A stretch of 64,000 bases of DNA from Gracilinanus agilis. Lineage: Eukaryota. The notes beneath the pieces were generated by a model. That model saw only the letters and a list, made by a program, of their open reading frames with translations, searched no databases and was not told the DNA's origin. Location of the stretch: assembly GCF_016433145.1 (NCBI RefSeq), contig NC_058130.1, forward strand, positions 47,187,530-47,251,529, written 5' to 3'. Positions 149 through 49,970 of this stretch are shown one piece after another. Within the stretch, counting starts at the first letter, position 1. Each line of letters opens with the position of its first letter. The translations under genes were made by a program, and so were the position numbers.

Positions 149-342
149 CAGTGATTCCCAAAGTGGGCACCACCTCCCCCTAGTGGGTGCTGCAGCAATC
201 CAGGAAAGCGGTGATGGCCACAATTTTTTTGTATTACATTCTATTCTGAGGTCAATAAATAGTTTCATAATTTCCAGGGGGCACTAAGTAATATTTTTTT
301 CTGGAAAGGGGGCAGTAGGCCAAAAAAGTTTGGGAACCACTG
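149..342 (+). mobile_element. Non-autonomous hAT (Charlie-like) DNA transposon/MITE, copy 1, 194 bp (strand arbitrary)
   Basis: Terminal inverted repeats CAGTGATTCCCAAA...TTTGGGAACCACTG; perfect 8-bp TSD CTCCAGGG at 141-148 and 343-350; roughly 90% identical by eye to the reverse complement of 49457-49650. Confidence 0.93.
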
Positions 343-3200: not shown

Positions 3201-6200
3201 TTTTAATTTTAATTAGTTATAATAGGATATGAAATGGCCTTTTCCCAGCCCCAAGGAGCCAACCTATTAGCAGCCTCATGCTGTACCAATGTCTCAGTCT
3301 CCCCCAACATACCCCATGACTCTTCCTTATAGGAGGCCAAGATTTCTTCCCATGGACTCCCCTCTACAACTGAATTTATCCTAAAATGTTGCTTTGAGGG
3401 TGTATTTTTTATGCTTGCCCTAACCTCGATTATTTTGTAGCATTTGCCCTGGGCACCAGAACTCCCTGTAATAGCACCACCTGAGAGTGACCCAAGAGCC
3501 ATGGTCAATAAAGCCTACTTGTGAGATGAAATTGGAACCACGGGAGCTCATCAGGCAGTTGGGAATAAGTCAATGGACTGTAAGAGAATGTGGCTAAAAA
3601 GGGACCTGAAGGAATTCTGGAAAAATAACAAGACAACAAGAATAGAAATTGGGTTTTTTTTTTGCAAAAAGATTTGGCCTTAAGGTTGAAATAAAGAGAG
3701 CTAATATGGCAAAAGGCTGAAACAAAGGTGACAGAATGAAGGGAAAAGGGGAAGGAGAAATCATTTTTAAGTGCCTACTATGTGCCAGGCACTCTGCTAA
3801 ATGTTTTACAAATATTTTTCATTTGATCCACCCAACAGCTTTGTGAGACAGGTTCTAGCATTATCCCTATTTACCTCTCAATTTAAGAGAAGTTAAACCT
3901 ATGAGGCAGACAAAGGTTAACTTTAGATCTTCCTAACTGGATCTTCCATATTCCAGCCCAGTGTTCTGCATGAGAAGAATGACAGTGCCTTATGTGCTTA
4001 TGGGAGGAGTTTGAAACACACTTATATCATTGCATGCAAGAATCATTCAAATTGAGTTCTTTCTAGTCCATTCCCTCAGTAAGACAAATACTTCTCTAGA
4101 TCTAACCAGAGATATATATCAACGGAAATGAATGGAAGTGACTTCACTAAGTTTATTGCTTCTCTGGTGACTTGATTGTTCACATGTGAAATGAATTTCT
4201 TTTCTGAAGATGTTTCCCTCATCTACTTAAACCCTTTCTAGAGATTTTAGTTGATTGCAAGCTAAATAAAAGCCAACAGTGTGACATGGCAGATAAGAAA
4301 ATGATATGGTTTTAAGCTAATTTAGACAAAACATCGCATTTAGGGAAAGGATAATCCAATTTTTTTTGCCCTAGTCACCTACATCTGGACCTCAGTTTTC
4401 AGTTCCAGGGACAGTTTAGAACGGATATGCCGAAGTGTCCAGGATGGTCTGGAGATCATACCACAGCAATCTAACCAGGATTTATTAAGCACCTACCAAG
4501 TCCCTGCCTTCAAAGAGATGACTGCATTCTGTTATGAAAAATGGGTGAGGGAAATGGAAATGTTTAGGCTAAAAAAGTTGGAGATTGAAAGGGAAAAAGA
4601 GAACTGTTGCTATGAGGTTCAAATGAATATATAGATATGTATTTATGAAATTATTTGTATTTTATTAACTTTATTCTTGACCTTCCCAACCCAGTGATCC
4701 TTCTTGTCTTGGCACTCCTCTAACATTTGCTATCTAAATTCCCTCCCCTATTTGAGTTTTATTCATACTGCCTTGTATAATTTATTATCTTTTTGTGCAT
4801 ATTTGAACAGCTCTCTTTTGGTGACAGCTCTCGCATTCCCTTTAAATCATCAGTGGCTCTTCAGGGTCTTCAGTATAAATTCTAAAATCTTCATCTATTA
4901 TTAAAGGCTTTCCATGATCTGAACCAACTTACTGTGCCACCCACATAGCAGGCCCCCTGAAATAGTCCAGGCATTAGGTCATGAACTCCAGCTACAATAG
5001 TACCAAGGAGAAGAGAAATGAGGCCAAATGGCCTGAGGAAAGAGTACCAAATTTAGAGTCAGAAGACCTGGGTTTAAATCCTGAATACCTTACTTGGCCT
5101 CATTTTCCTCATCTGTAAAATGAGGCTTTTAAACTAAGGGACTCCATTAGTTCCTTCTGGCTCCAAATCTATAAACCTTGTGTTATTATAATTTTCCCCC
5201 TCTTCTATGAAACATCTATAATTACTATAAATTTTGTTACTATTCTTCCAGGCTTCATTACACACAAAACAGCAATGTAAATTTTGTGAGCCTATTTATT
5301 CAGCTTTACAATTCCACTCACTCAGCAGTGTGTGGTGCCAACTTGGGAGGAGGAGATTTGGCTCAAGATCATGCAGGAAGGTTTAATTAGTCTTCTGTGA
5401 CTCAAATTTACTTCCTTTTCTCAATTCATTTAGATTAGAAGAAAAGGAAGTTAGTTCCCCCTCCCAGTGATAGCCAAAGCATTTCGGATTCATTTCTTTT
5501 CCAGGCTTTTATGAGGTGCTGAAGTTATTGTGTGATAGTATCCATATCTAAATCACTTCATTTGCTATATCACTTCTGATCATAAAGGATCACTAGAGAA
5601 GACCATGAAAGAAGCTTTAGAAATTGATAAAGGTAGGTATATTGATATATTGATAGAGGTAGGCAATGTATCAGGCTACAAAGACTAACCAAAACTAAAC
5701 ACTTAAGGAAAGAGAGAGGTTTCAGAAGGTACTTTCAGATTCAGTTCTGAGGCATGAAATCATCACAGATCAAATATTCAAATGTATAAAAATGGGTCCA
5801 GACCAGGATCCTGTTTGAAACTCAGCCACAGGTAACAAAAGAAACCCTTATGAACATGTACATAGCACCGACCTAGCTATGTACATGTATGTACTCAACT
5901 ATGTAAGATCACCTTCCAAGGATGGACCATGTGAAAGGAGGACACACAGAGACTCAGAAGAAAAATCCCTGAAAATTGCTCCCCTGCAGCAATCATGGCA
6001 CCTCACTTCAATATTCCTTCTTAGTTCCTATGTTCTCTCCTTAAACTAAATTTTATTTCATACACAGAACTATGAAGACCAGTTTAATTAAATATCAGCA
6101 ATGATTGGGTAGCTCCTTTCTTCTTAAAGATGTCAACTAAATGCTCTCCCAGCAAGATATCCGTTTGGCCCCAGAAGCTGCCTGCTAATTCAGCTGCCTC

Positions 6201-8040
6201 TTTCAAGTGAGGTCCAATGGAGATGCATGCCTGGAAACAGAGGACAGGAAAGTGCAATGTACTGGGATTCAAAAGATCTATGTTTAAATTTAAGTTCTGC
6301 TACCCACTAGCTATATGATATTAGACAAGTCATTTTGTTTCATCATCAATTAAATGAAGAGGTTGGACTAACTGGTCTGAAAGGTCCCAGAGTTGGAAGG
6401 AACTTCAGAGGCCACCCTAGATCAAGCCATCCCTAGACAAAAGTCCCTATACCATTACTGACAAGGGGCTCTCAGTTTGGGTTTGAAGGCCTCTAGTGAG
6501 AAGAGTTCCTTCCCATATTGTCAGTCTTGGAAATTCAAATATTTGCTGAGATCACCATTTAATTCTCCCATTCTCTCCCTTATAAGATCATTCCTCAACA
6601 GTTGGGTTTTTTTTAGTTGTTGTGATGGTCAACAAAATTAGAGATGAATAATATCCAAGTCCACTTGAATGAGATTTGTGAAAATCTAGGGACCTTAACT
6701 CCAGTTTCTCTAAAAGTTTTCTATAATACTATGCATTACACAATTGAGTCATGGCATTCTATAATAGGATAACTCAACTTTAAACATTTCCATCTCCAGT
6801 TTCATATTCTTCCCTACGTAGCTCATTCCCCTTTCAGATCTCTCCAATTATTAGGAAGTTTCTTCTTAAATCAATCTCAAACCTGTCTCTCTGTAGCTTC
6901 CATCCAGTTTTCTAGTCCTGACCTCTGGATCAAGTAGAACAAATCTATTCCTTTTTCCATGTGACAACTCTTTAAACAATTGAAGGCAGCTCCCTTGCAG
7001 TTCTAAAATTCTCACATTTCAGGTATCTCAAGACTCCTCTTAGCTCTATGATTCTCTATTACTCTGAATGCTTCAACAAAAAGCTTAAAATCACAAGCTC
7101 CAAATTATCCTCCAGTTCACTGGAGTTCAGAGCCCTAAAAAGTCTCCAAGAGCACACTTGAATCATATGCTACAGCAGTGGTGCTATAAGAGAGTTAGTT
7201 TAACTACATAACTGTCTGCCCACACAGCTCTCTCACTACAGCCTTCTTTAATCAGTTCTAACTAAATGAGTTAAAGGAGAATAATTCAGGAACTAGCCAG
7301 GCATGGAGCATGTGCTCAACACCCCATTCTCTTCCCCAAAACAGCAGCTATTTAGAAAGGTGGGATTTTAGAGCTAGCAGGGACCTCACTAGAGATCATC
7401 TAGTCCATCCCCTTCTTTTGTAAAGTGAGAAAAAACTGAAGTGAGAAAGCAGAACTAATTGCCCAAGATTACACAGTCAGGTACTGAGAAGCCAAGCTGC
7501 AGATCCTTGTTTCTTGATTCCCAGACCAGTACATTTTCTCTCATGCAACATCTCTTTTATGTGCCCTGTTCTCTCACATACAATGTGACAGAATAGAAAC
7601 ACCAGTGATTCTATAGTAAAGTACCTGGGTTCAAATCTCTGATACCTAAAATCTATGTGATAAAGTCACTTAAAATTCTTGGACCTCTGTTTATATATGT
7701 GTAAAAAAGTAGTGTTTTGGCTAGATGGATCCCTTCTAGCTCTAGATCCAAATGATAAACCTTTCATCATCATGAGATATTTATTTAAATGACATTTATT
7801 TATTGACATTTATTGAGTCACTGTGATAGGTGATGGGTAACCTAAAGTAGGAAGCCTTCTTTTTAGGTTGTCCAAGCATAAAGTGTCCAGTTTTACCATG
7901 ACTACAAGCAGTATGGAACAGTAGAAAATATGATGAATTTGGAGTTGAAGAACCTGGATGTAAATCATGGTCCAATACTTTTTAAATTTTTATTATATAT
8001 TTGTTATTTTCTACATTAAAACTTCCAAGTAACTCCCTCC

Positions 8041-8863
8041 TGTAAGGGTTAAAATTAATGGTTGGGTAATAATTATATGAAATCATGAGGTCACCAAAAT
8101 TTATTGTATCTTGAGTCAGAAATTTATTTACAAATATTTACAAAATGGAGAGGAAACAATAAAGTAGAGAAATATGAAGAGGTTAGAGAGGTTATCTATC
8201 CTATAAATCTAAATGTTTTACTCTGAGTCTGCTTAATCCAGGCAGAGATTAATTAGCTCTCAACCAGGAAGACTGGTATTAGGTAACCACTCAGCCTCCT
8301 CCAAGATGGAAGCTAGTCTCTTCAGAAACTAGGAAAGGAGTCAGCCTTTCACTCACCCAATGAAGCACTCCAGAAGTCAGACTCCAAGTTGAAGCCAAGC
8401 CCATAATCCAAGCCATAGTCTCCAGAGAAGCTCCCTTGAAGACTATCTCTAGCCAGAAGACTATCTCCAGAAGACAATCCCTTCAGACTATCTTCTCAAA
8501 GACAATCTTCTCTGAAGGAGTTCAGGGCTTGCTTTGATGGTGACTTCTTGTCCTTTCCCCTCTTCACAGGGGCCTATCACAGTTTCCAAATGGTCTAGCC
8601 CTGCCCAGGGGGCAATGTCTGTGGGATCAACTTCTCACCTTCTGAAGGTTAAGTTCTCAACAAAAATATTCATAGCTAAAGGTGTGAATTTTCTAAGTAC
8701 CTTGCTAACTTCTCATCTAGTACTAAGCAGGGTGTTCAATCTTGTTGATTCAATTTAAAAGTAGACAAAGGAGAGCTAATCCAGTCTTCAGACTAGTGAA
8801 ATATTAAGTAGGGGTACTTAAGTTGGTATTAACTCAAGATAGACAATAAAGAATTCTCTTTCA
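8041..8863 (-). mobile_element. Solo ERV LTR, 823 bp
   Basis: TG...CA termini (tgtaagggtt...ctctttca); minus-strand AATAAA at 8100-8105; internal short tandem repeats; minus-strand donor GG|GTGAGT at 8351-8356. No clean TSD found. Confidence 0.8.
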
Positions 8864-47498: not shown

Positions 47499-49207
47499 AC
47501 ATATCTGCAATCATACTTAATTCCATAGAAGTTTTCAAATACTGTATTATATATTTATAGAGATAGAGATATTTATAAAGAAATATCCATAAAGGAGAAC
47601 TCAATTCTTAATAAAATAAAGCTCATCACAGAATATATGCCAATGAATTCTGCCTCTGATATGAACAAAGGGCCCGAATTTAGGGAATTCCTTAAAGTAT
47701 AATTTAAAATGCCAAATGGGTTTGGAACGAGAAATTAGGTTGTTACCAACAAAAATGTGATAGAATTGAAAAACTTAATTGACATATGGGATAGAGAAGG
47801 TTCATTTGTGTGTTTACCAATCATTGCTAGTGATGGGGTGTTGCCAAAATCTTAGTTTAATTTTAAGGTATTTAAATACTCCATAACTGTAGCTAAGGAC
47901 TTCTGTAGAGTATTTAGTCCTTCAACATCATTTAATAATAGGTAAAAAATTTGGAAACAAGAAATTTATATGATTAGACAGGAACTGTCCAGTTGCAAAT
48001 GGCAATTCAAAGTGAAGAAAATATAATTATTAAAATTTTAAAATTTTATTTAAACTTAAATAGACATCATTGTCCAAAATATGACCACTAATAGAAGAAA
48101 TGAGGGAGAATTTGGAAAGGCTGTATGAAAACATGTTTCTGGGTCATGTCAATGCCTACAGAAGAAATCATGGCAGAGTGCACAGAGAGTTATACCTGGA
48201 ATAATAAAGACCTGGGTTCAAATTATGCCTAGAGTACTCAGAAGCTGTGTAACTCTGGGAAAGGTAATTTAAAATTCTGAAACTCAGTTTCCCATCAGCA
48301 TAATGGAAATAATGATACCTGTCATATTTACCTTACAGAGTTATTTGTGGAATTCACATGGAATAATGCATATGGAGTGATATGCAGATTTTAAACTGAT
48401 ATGTATGCCAATTATTATTATCTATTTGTCAAACATGTTGCCTTTTTTTTACTGGATTTAATTGATATAGTAAGAACCTCCACCACCATCAATATACCCT
48501 GGTCTGCAACTTCTCAGAGAAGCTTTCTGGGGCACTGAAGGGTTAAATGACTTCTTCAAGGTCACACAGTTATTATGTATTTTAATCAACACTGTTATGT
48601 CTGTATAATATATAAAAACAGACAATTCTGATAGAACCTTATGTATGATTCCTAAAAATTACAGCACTTAGTAAAAATCTTTCCATAAAAATCATAGGGC
48701 TTATGGGGATAAGAGGGCTAACAAGATAACACTCAAAAACTTTGTCAGCAACTTTTTTTTAAGTTAGGAACATAATAAAAATGATAGCAGTTTTACACAT
48801 ATTATGGTCAGGATTTAAATCCAGGTTTTCATAACTCCAGTTCTAGAGTGTACTAGGCTATCTCTGAGGTCTCTTATAGTTTTAGCATTCTAGAATTCTT
48901 TCAGTCTTCTTAGCTAGAAAGAAATTCTGCCTATATGTGTTGTATTCCGTCCTACCTTAGAGCCTCTGGTAAGTTACATTCCATTGTCAAAACACAGATT
49001 GTGCTTAGGGATATCCTTTAAAAGGAACCATTTGGATTCTGCTTCTCTTAGAGCACATATTCAGCTAAGCTAATTCCTAAACATCCCCAGTTGATCCAGG
49101 AATAGCCAACAAAAAGTATTCCTAAGAGAAAAAGGCAATGAAATTTTCATGACAATTAAGTTACTGTTTTTTCCAACCACATGGTTGCTGAGAAGAACAG
49201 CATTTCA

Positions 49208-49221
49208 CTGCCATCTCTTGG
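49208..49221 (-). promoter_or_regulatory. Candidate CTCF motif in non-repeat DNA
   Basis: Minus strand reads CCAAGAGATGGCAG(TG) versus the CCASYAGRKGGCRS consensus, with mismatches only at core positions 4-5. Confidence 0.45.
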
Positions 49222-49456
49222 CAGATCCTCAGATAACGGCAGCCGTTTCTGAGACACTAAAATTTTGGTTTCAAACTTAAATAAAATACCATGCCACTCT
49301 TCCTAAATAATGAGCAAGAAAGAATGTAGGAAGTAGGCCACCGTAAATATCATTTCTAATTTTTCTTACTAAATGCCATGTAAGAATGTCAATAGATTTC
49401 CTTAAAGCAAAATAATAAGTAAATATCATCTTAGGAGTGGGAATAATAGTCTAGCC

Positions 49457-49650
49457 CAGTGGTTCCCAAACTTTTTTGACCTACCGCCCCCTTTCCAGAA
49501 AAAAAATATTACTTAGCGCCCCCTGGAAATTATGAAACTATTTATTGAACTCAGAATAGAATGTAATACAAAAAAAGTGTGGCCATCACCACTTCCCGGA
49601 TCACTGGAGCACCCACCAGGGGGCGGTGGCACCCACTTTGGGACTCACTG
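49457..49650 (-). mobile_element. Non-autonomous hAT MITE, copy 2, 194 bp (opposite orientation to copy 1)
   Basis: TIRs CAGTGGTTCCCAAA...TTTGGGACTCACTG; perfect 8-bp TSD GTCTAGCC at 49449-49456 and 49651-49658, resembling the NTCTAGAN Charlie target. Confidence 0.95.
49613..49626 (+). promoter_or_regulatory. Near-consensus CTCF motif inside the MITE
   Basis: CCACCAGGGGGCGG versus canonical CCACCAGGGGGCGC. Confidence 0.55.
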
Positions 49651-49970
49651 GTCTAGCCAATACTCCCACTCTCCAGCAGTCAGACGATGGAACAAAAAAC
49701 AAAAACCCTAAATCCCAGGTCTATTTCTAGCAAATCATGCCAGGTCAGAGAAATGAGATTAGAGAAGGCTACAGAGAAAGGGTTCTACCATCCCTATCTT
49801 ATTTTACAGAGGAAAAAAATGTTAGGCTTAAAGATTACATCTAATATAATATGTCTTTTAATCAACAGAGTTATAGGACTTATACAGTTGATTTTGCTAT
49901 AATCTGAAATACTCTTCCAAAAATCACAGCACTATGCAAAACCATTCAATAAAAAACATAGGGCTTTCAA

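What the first reader, a model, noticed from the sequence alone, without database searches (positions are those of the whole stretch)
49457..49650. A 194-bp hAT MITE as a mobile carrier of CTCF motifs
Seen: an intact MITE (TIRs, 8-bp TSD) with three AGGGGGCG boxes. One is a near-perfect CTCF core (CCACCAGGGGGCGG), one matches the 3' two-thirds (CCAGGGGGCGCTA) in the opposite orientation, and one is subterminal (aaagggggcggt). A second copy lies 49 kb away, suggesting an abundant family. Established: transposons have spread CTCF sites in mammals (rodent B2; the eutherian hAT MER20; a MAR-type SINE in opossum), and several opossum hAT families (SPIN, OposCharlie1) are horizontally acquired. Inference: a lineage-specific, possibly horizontally acquired DNA transposon could have seeded bidirectional insulator cassettes. 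Alternative: the boxes are transposase-binding subterminal repeats that only resemble CTCF sites. I could not assign the family name.
Basis: partly seen in the sequence, partly recalled or inferred. Interest (0 to 1): 0.72.

Follow-up and report, generated by a model that had tools for sequence, protein, structure and literature searches.

The report
Dead hAT transposon carrying CTCF motif
This is a real 194-base relic of a cut-and-paste (hAT) transposon, and one of its own transposase-docking repeats happens to spell a textbook binding motif for the genome-folding protein CTCF; that is a familiar way for such motifs to spread, and binding here is untested.

Summary
At 49457-49650 lies an intact 194-bp MITE with 14-nt terminal inverted repeats and a perfect 8-bp target-site duplication. 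A second copy, 91% identical, lies at 149-342(-) with its own duplication.

All three AGGGGGCG boxes in the 64 kb are in this copy. Its 19-mer at 49610-49628 is the best CTCF match in the window (24.4 bits). The same site in the second copy ranks second.

Only one box is a CTCF-grade site. The middle box is weak (9.6 bits) and the 5' box does not score, so "bidirectional cassette" is not supported.

The exact 21-nt terminus occurs in at least 22 unrelated hAT families in eukaryotic DNA within metagenomes. These share a stereotyped layout of family-specific boxes at the same distances from the tips, and the MITE's boxes sit in those slots. The CTCF-like 19-mer is one full box plus the adjacent degenerate inverted box of the left end.

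The element is not OposCharlie1.

This scan already noted the same family many times elsewhere in this genome. Verdict: a new member of a known kind, of modest interest.

The parts
49449..49456 (.). Target-site duplication, left copy (GTCTAGCC)
   Evidence: Exact 8-nt direct repeat immediately outside both TIRs (family D7).
49457..49477 (+). Terminus of the T-run end: 14-nt TIR CAGTGGTTCCCAAA plus CTTTTTT. By comparison this is the conventional right (3') end of a hAT element.
   Evidence: Inverted repeat with 49637-49650 (I1). The exact 21-mer ends more than 120 hAT elements in metagenome contigs. In L063 a hAT transposase C-terminus (Pfam Dimer_Tnp_hAT, E 4e-5) lies 136 bp inside this kind of end. 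OC1 has its T-run at the 3' end.
49483..49492 (+). Subterminal box 1 (ACCGCCCCCT), core at element nt 29-36
   Evidence: Direct repeat with box 2 at 32-nt spacing (D4). It is inverted relative to box 3 (I4). The slot is the same as in 11 of 22 hAT families with this terminus. It has no CTCF score.
49515..49526 (+). Subterminal box 2 (AGCGCCCCCTGG), core at element nt 61-68; on the minus strand a weak partial CTCF match
   Evidence: PWM score 9.6 bits for 49514-49532(-), lacking the CC at motif positions 4-5.
49610..49628 (+). CTCF-grade 19-mer CACCCACCAGGGGGCGGTG, made of a degenerate box (49610-17), the inverted full box AGGGGGCG (49618-25) and GTG
   Evidence: Best PWM score in the window, 24.4 bits. 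Sole hit of the 15-mer consensus. Box composition.
49629..49636 (+). Second degenerate box (GCACCCAC; ancestral GCGCCCAC inferred from CA/TG in the two copies), a direct repeat of 49609-49616
   Evidence: D8; positions 175/176 are CA in A and TG in B.
49637..49650 (-). TIR of the palindrome-bearing end (conventional left end), CAGTGAGTCCCAAA on the minus strand
   Evidence: The left-end layout is compared with other families.
49651..49658 (.). Target-site duplication, right copy (GTCTAGCC)
   Evidence: D7.
149..342 (-). Second copy of the same MITE family, 194 bp, 91% identical, flanked by its own duplication CCCTGGAG (141-148 and 343-350)
   Evidence: There are 17 differences: 8 of CpG-decay type, 2 indels, 7 other.
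171..189 (-). CTCF-like 19-mer of copy B (CACCCACTAGGGGGAGGTG)
   Evidence: 19.7 bits, second best in the window, at the same element position as in copy A.

Best explanation
This is a dead, non-autonomous hAT transposon (a MITE of the Charlie-like kind) that inserted here and, independently, 49 kb away.

Its G/C-rich boxes (CGCCCCCT / AGGGGGCG) are the family's own subterminal repeats. These are the short sequences next to the terminal inverted repeats on which the BED zinc finger of a hAT transposase docks.

- One end (49457 side) has the layout TIR, T-run, box, about 22 nt, box.
- The other end (49650 side) has a full box wedged between degenerate inverted boxes.

At that second end, one full box plus its neighbouring inverted box reads CCACCAGGGGGCGG, a near-consensus CTCF core. 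So every insertion of this family drops one strong, oriented CTCF motif as a by-product of its transposition machinery.

Shown: the element's anatomy, the motif strength, the motif's presence in both copies, and the fit of the boxes to the stereotyped hAT end layout.

Inferred: that a transposase bound the boxes (by analogy with Hermes), and that CTCF can bind the site in vivo. I put the chance that this copy is bound in some tissue at roughly 40%. A role as an insulator is much less likely.
For: Anatomy:
- TIRs, 8-bp duplications and two independent copies.

hAT identity:
- The exact 21-nt terminus ends many elements with 8-bp duplications in metagenome-borne eukaryotic DNA.
- One of these has a hAT dimerisation domain ORF just inside that end.
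- The terminus matches OposCharlie1's at 12 of 15 positions, and the end asymmetry is the same.

Subterminal-repeat reading:
- In 11 of 22 unrelated families with this terminus, a family-specific GC-rich box pair starts at nt 23-31 and again 29-33 nt further in. Shuffles and random windows give 0.34 expected, maximum 2. The MITE's boxes start at nt 26/29 and 58/61.
- At the other end, 7 families place the box at 22-27 and/or inverted copies at about 19, 37 and 59 from the tip. Six of the seven have P<=0.004 against shuffles.
- The MITE has its full box at 26 and degenerate inverted copies near 15, 35 and 58 (and reading).
- In Hermes, BED domains bind subterminal repeats, including a quasi-palindromic pair next to the left TIR, and the two ends are asymmetric (PMC10368747).

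Motif strength.

Specificity: none of 30 complete related MITEs has a CTCF match above 11.5 bits. The strong motif therefore stems from this family's particular box sequence.
Against: - No transposase for this family was found, so box binding is by analogy only.
- The degenerate inverted boxes of the MITE's left end match at only 5-6 of 7-8 positions. In the formal test, the MITE's own left end was not significant on its own (P 0.2-0.4).
- Only two copies could be examined.
- The comparison families come from unidentified hosts, possibly only a few species.
Confidence: 0.75

Rival explanations
1. One reading: the family is a lineage-specific, perhaps horizontally acquired DNA transposon that seeded many functional CTCF-bound insulators, each copy acting as a bidirectional cassette.
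For: - A strong motif sits at the same place in both copies.
- hAT MITEs (MER20, MER91B) do supply CTCF loop anchors in human.
- SINE-borne expansions are documented in opossum, rodents and dog.
- Horizontally transferred hAT families are known in marsupials.
- Non-CpG divergence between the copies is low (3.6%), which suggests fairly recent activity; in mammals that often goes with horizontal entry.
- Unchecked notes say the family recurs across this genome.
Against: - Only one strong, single-orientation site per copy.
- The two copies here point away from each other (B on -, A on +), so they are not a convergent pair.
- 9 of about 14 ancestral CpGs have decayed, including CpGs a few bases from the motif. 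This indicates germline methylation rather than long-term protected occupancy.
- The one opossum CTCF ChIP study ascribes its repeat-borne sites, numbering in the hundreds, to the MAR1 SINE and names no DNA transposon. However, it used another species and short reads.
- No occupancy data could be obtained.
- No copy of the MITE body was found outside this genome, but those collections hold almost no vertebrate DNA.
Confidence: 0.2
2. The motif is a pure coincidence with no host consequence: copies are methylated, packed in inactive chromatin and never bound by CTCF.
For: - Heavy CpG decay in both copies.
- The motif is fully explained by the transposon's own repeat layout.
- Most motif-bearing copies of CTCF-carrying repeat families are unbound in the species studied (general knowledge, not tested here).
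Against: A 24-bit match is at the top of the motif range, and such sites are usually bound somewhere (general knowledge). The motif's own CpG is intact in copy A, and copy B keeps a 19.7-bit site.
Confidence: 0.35
3. The boxes act as GC boxes for Sp1/KLF-type factors rather than for CTCF.
For: GGGCGG/CCGCCC occurs in box 1 and box 3 of copy A.
Against: Both are lost in copy B, box 2 lacks it, and the match is a short, low-information motif.
Confidence: 0.05

Closest known systems
MER20 and MER91B (eutherian hAT-Charlie / hAT-Tip100 MITEs that supply CTCF sites)
   Same: Short non-autonomous hAT elements that carry a CTCF motif and contribute loop-anchor and domain-boundary CTCF sites (PMC9902604).
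   Different: They belong to a different lineage (eutherian) and have different sequences. Their binding is shown by ChIP and Hi-C, whereas nothing is shown here. Here the motif can be traced to the subterminal-repeat layout.
B2/B3 SINEs (rodents), SINEC_Cf (dog), MAR1_Mdo SINE (opossum)
   Same: Lineage-specific repeats that spread a single-orientation CTCF core motif (PMC3368268).
   Different: Those are retrotransposons copied through RNA. This is a cut-and-paste DNA transposon, and its motif doubles as a transposition signal.
OposCharlie1 (OC1) and its 192-bp MITE OC1_NA
   Same: A marsupial hAT with an 8-bp duplication and a MITE of nearly the same size. The terminus is 12/15 identical. 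The end asymmetry is the same: palindromic boxes at the 5' end, T-run plus box at the 3' end.
   Different: The body and box sequences are unrelated, and none of the MITE's diagnostic strings occurs in the OC1 files. OC1's horizontal transfer is documented; this family's history is unknown.
Hermes transposon ends (housefly hAT)
   Same: TIR followed by short subterminal repeats, with a quasi-palindromic pair next to the left TIR bound cooperatively by BED domains, and asymmetric ends (PMC10368747).
   Different: The Hermes repeats are 4-5 nt (AAGT/C), whereas the boxes here are 8-10 nt and G/C-rich. Binding is solved structurally for Hermes and only inferred here.

Membership tests
hAT superfamily | 8-bp target-site duplication | tested here: met
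   GTCTAGCC x2 for copy A and CCCTGGAG x2 for copy B, both perfect.
hAT superfamily | Short TIRs beginning CAG (YARNG) | tested here: met
   CAGTGGTTCCCAAA / CAGTGAGTCCCAAA, 12 of 14 matching.
hAT superfamily | Terminus associated with a hAT transposase | tested here: met
   The same 21-nt terminus lies 136 bp from the stop of an ORF with Pfam Dimer_Tnp_hAT (23.7 bits, cut-off 21.4) in L063. This is in another organism, not in this genome.
hAT superfamily | Target preference nTnnnnAn | tested here: inconclusive
   GTCTAGCC has T2 but not A7. CCCTGGAG has A7 but not T2. Two sites are too few.
MITE | Small, non-coding, several copies with distinct duplications | tested here: met
   194 bp with no ORF; two copies with different flanks. 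A high copy number rests only on unchecked scan notes.
Charlie-like hAT group | Terminus and end layout like named Charlie elements; transposase phylogeny | tested here: inconclusive
   The terminus is 12/15 identical to OposCharlie1 and the end asymmetry is the same. No transposase of this family is available for a tree. The resemblance to MER5A termini is from memory only.
OposCharlie1 (OC1) family | Sequence identity to the OC1 / OC1_NA consensus beyond the TIR | tested here: not met
   No diagnostic string of the MITE occurs in the OC1 supplementary files. The bodies read as unrelated.
SPIN family | Sequence identity to the SPIN / SPIN_NA consensus | not tested
   No reference sequence was available in the tools. 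From memory the SPIN box is CGACCC-type, unlike CGCCCCCT.
Transposon-borne CTCF sites | Consensus-grade CTCF motif at a fixed position in independent copies | tested here: met
   24.4 and 19.7 bits at element nt 154-172 in both copies.
Transposon-borne CTCF sites | CTCF occupancy in vivo, enriched over background | not testable with these tools
Transposon-borne CTCF sites | Insulator or loop-anchor activity | not testable with these tools
   No Hi-C or reporter data are accessible.

The most novel reading that the evidence does not exclude
A high-copy, didelphid-specific hAT MITE whose left-end transposase-docking palindrome is at the same time a consensus CTCF site has seeded thousands of CTCF-bound sites. 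This would be the first DNA-transposon-driven CTCF expansion in a marsupial. CTCF and the transposase would also have competed for the same bases while the family was active.
Probability: 0.15. Interest if true: 0.55.

Novelty: new member of a known kind. Interest (0 to 1): 0.3.

Why it matters
If many copies are bound, this family would add a DNA-transposon route to the SINE route already known for reshaping CTCF maps in marsupials. It would also offer a clean case in which a host architectural motif arises directly from a transposon's own end-recognition sequence. As it stands, it is a well-formed example of a known phenomenon. The useful point is that two of the three boxes should not be counted as CTCF sites.

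Tried and rejected
I dropped the tool and did no reads work (no read laying, no organism label, no ChIP check).

2. The metagenome scan with the 21-nt terminus gave more than 120 contigs, but similarity to the MITE stops after 23-26 nt. These are other hAT families, not this MITE. They were used only for the end-layout comparison.

3. A MITE-internal 25-mer had 0 hits in genome contigs and viral contigs. This is uninformative, because those collections are microbial and viral.

4. Literature: no paper holds the terminus string, and no paper in the held library links an opossum hAT MITE to CTCF. The supplements of Schmidt et al. 2012 list no matching motif-words.

5. OposCharlie1 membership was rejected.

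6. Rfam found nothing in the window. Pfam found nothing on the six long ORFs scanned, apart from one sub-threshold hit on a low-complexity ORF. No gene context was found.

7. Single-strand folding is unremarkable (z -1.45). There is no sign of an RNA or hairpin role beyond TIR pairing.

8. The longer elements sharing the terminus (L049, L068, L114) have no transposase ORF.

9. Family name: not assignable without Dfam or Repbase.

10. Species: earlier notes of this scan call the genome the agile gracile mouse opossum. I could not check this.

Full report
**What is there.** The sequence at 49457-49650 is a complete miniature transposon.
- It starts CAGTGGTTCCCAAA and ends TTTGGGACTCACTG, so the arms match at 12 of 14 positions.
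- The 8-nt string GTCTAGCC stands immediately outside both ends.
- A BLAST of the element against the window finds one more full-length copy, at 149-342 on the minus strand, 91.3% identical.
- That copy is flanked by its own perfect 8-nt duplication, CCCTGGAG.

Two copies with different duplications are two separate insertions of one family. No ORF, RNA family or tandem repeat overlaps the element. Single-strand folding only pairs the ends.

**The CTCF-like motif.**
- AGGGGGCG occurs three times in 64 kb, all inside copy A, against 0.05 expected.
- The 15-mer consensus CCASYAGRKGGCRSY (recalled from the literature) has a single hit in the window, 49613-49627, against none expected.
The site 49610-49628(+), CACCCACCAGGGGGCGGTG, scores 24.4 bits (p about 3.5e-9) and is the best site in the window.
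- The homologous site in copy B, 171-189(-), scores 19.7 bits and is second best.
- Against the canonical motif TGGCCACCAGGGGGCGCTA as printed in PMC10589630, the 19-mer matches at 14 of 19 positions, 13 in a row.
- The middle box (49514-49532, minus strand) reaches only 9.6 bits because it lacks the near-invariant CC of the 5' half. The 5' subterminal box does not score at all.

So each copy carries one strong, oriented motif, not three and not a bidirectional pair. In this window the two strong sites point away from each other.

**What the boxes are.** To place the element, I scanned the metagenome collection for its first 21 bases.
- More than 120 contigs from a handful of samples matched. 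They are eukaryotic DNA: single-exon adaptin, a mitochondrial carrier and a reverse transcriptase were found.
- Similarity to the MITE stops after 23-26 nt, so these are different elements that share the terminus.
- They fall into 22 sequence clusters. Many are complete, 181 bp to 3.2 kb, with matching inverted ends and 8-bp duplications.
- In L063, an ORF with the hAT C-terminal dimerisation domain ends 136 bp inside such a terminus. This ties the terminus to hAT transposases and marks the T-run end as the conventional right end.
- The OposCharlie1 consensus in the supplement of PMC3621081 shows the same polarity: its T-run lies next to the 3' TIR and a palindromic box pair lies next to the 5' TIR.

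**A stereotyped end layout.**
- Right end: 11 of the 22 families have a pair of family-specific GC-rich boxes. The first starts at nt 23-31 and the second 29-33 nt further in. Composition-matched shuffles and random windows of the same contigs give 0.34 and 0.33 expected, with a maximum of 2. The MITE's boxes 1 and 2 start at nt 26 (core 29) and 58 (core 61).
- Left end: seven families place the same box at 22-27 nt from the tip and/or inverted copies at about 19, 37 and 59. Six of the seven have P at or below 0.004 against shuffles. The MITE's left end (the 49650 side) has its full box at nt 26, with degenerate inverted copies near nt 15, 35 and 58. On its own this end is not statistically significant, but it fits the slots.
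- The CTCF 19-mer is left-end nt 23-41, that is, the full box plus the next, degenerate inverted box.

**Functional analogy and specificity.** In the one hAT element studied structurally, Hermes, the transposase's BED zinc fingers bind exactly such subterminal repeats. These include a quasi-palindromic pair next to the left TIR, and the two ends are asymmetric (PMC10368747). None of 30 complete related MITEs has a CTCF match above 11.5 bits. The strong motif is therefore a peculiarity of this family's box sequence, not a general property of such ends.

**Age and state.** The two copies differ at 17 positions: 8 are CpG-decay changes, 2 are indels and 7 are other substitutions (3.6% pairwise outside CpGs).
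- About 9 of 14 ancestral CpGs are gone, including CpGs a few bases on either side of the motif. This points to germline methylation.
- The CpG inside the motif is intact in A and altered by a transversion in B.
- With a generic mammalian rate (from memory), the copies would be on the order of 5-20 million years old. This is a rough inference from two copies.

**What could not be tested.** CTCF occupancy is the key claim.
I stopped using it and laid no reads.
- The only opossum CTCF ChIP study in the library (PMC3368268) is on Monodelphis liver. It ascribes its repeat-borne sites, which number in the hundreds, to the MAR1 SINE and names no DNA transposon. Its supplements hold none of this motif's words.
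- Horizontal transfer could not be tested. The MITE body was not found in the microbial, viral or metagenome collections, which says little.
- The element is not OposCharlie1. SPIN could not be compared.
- The family name needs Dfam.
- The species label (agile gracile mouse opossum) comes from unchecked earlier notes.

**Comparison with the known, and verdict.** Transposons spreading CTCF motifs is established for B2, SINEC and MAR1 SINEs and for the hAT MITEs MER20 and MER91B in human. This element works like those in principle. It is a different family in a different lineage, and binding is unproven.
- Other readers and follow-ups of this scan noted the same family repeatedly on other DNA of this genome and reached the same general verdict.
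- None mentioned subterminal repeats, so the derivation of the motif from the transposon's end layout is what this follow-up adds.
- I rate it a new member of a known kind, interest 0.3.

Noticed in passing
window 49206-49224 (-): The third-best CTCF-like site of the window (CTGCCAAGAGATGGCAGTG, 16.3 bits by the recalled matrix) lies in DNA with no other copy in this window, about 230 bp from the MITE. If it is bound, the MITE landed next to a pre-existing site.
   Followed up: partly
window 49435-49445 and 49661-49671: The insertion site sits at the centre of an 11-nt inverted repeat in the flanks (GAGTGGGAATA / TACTCCCACTC, 91% complementary, I3). This may be chance, or a palindromic target.
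   Followed up: no
L001-L120 (metagenome contigs, e.g. L061:3860-4065, L098, L062:7493-7892, L035:6550-7044): Eukaryotic DNA of unidentified organism(s) in a few JGI samples is packed with at least 22 hAT MITE families. All end in the same 21-mer as the opossum MITE, and each has its own box sequence in the same slots (right end about 26 and 57; left end about 19, 24, 37, 59). This is a neat natural series of transposase and binding-site co-variation.
   Followed up: partly
L063:2148-3176 (-): A partial hAT transposase ORF (343 aa, Dimer_Tnp_hAT) lies just inside the shared terminus. It is a candidate autonomous relative of this terminus class. The contig ends before the N-terminus.
   Followed up: partly
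window 6030-8863: Another first-stage note on this window proposes an LTR-initiated spliced transcript encoding a 68-aa peptide. I did not examine it.
   Followed up: no
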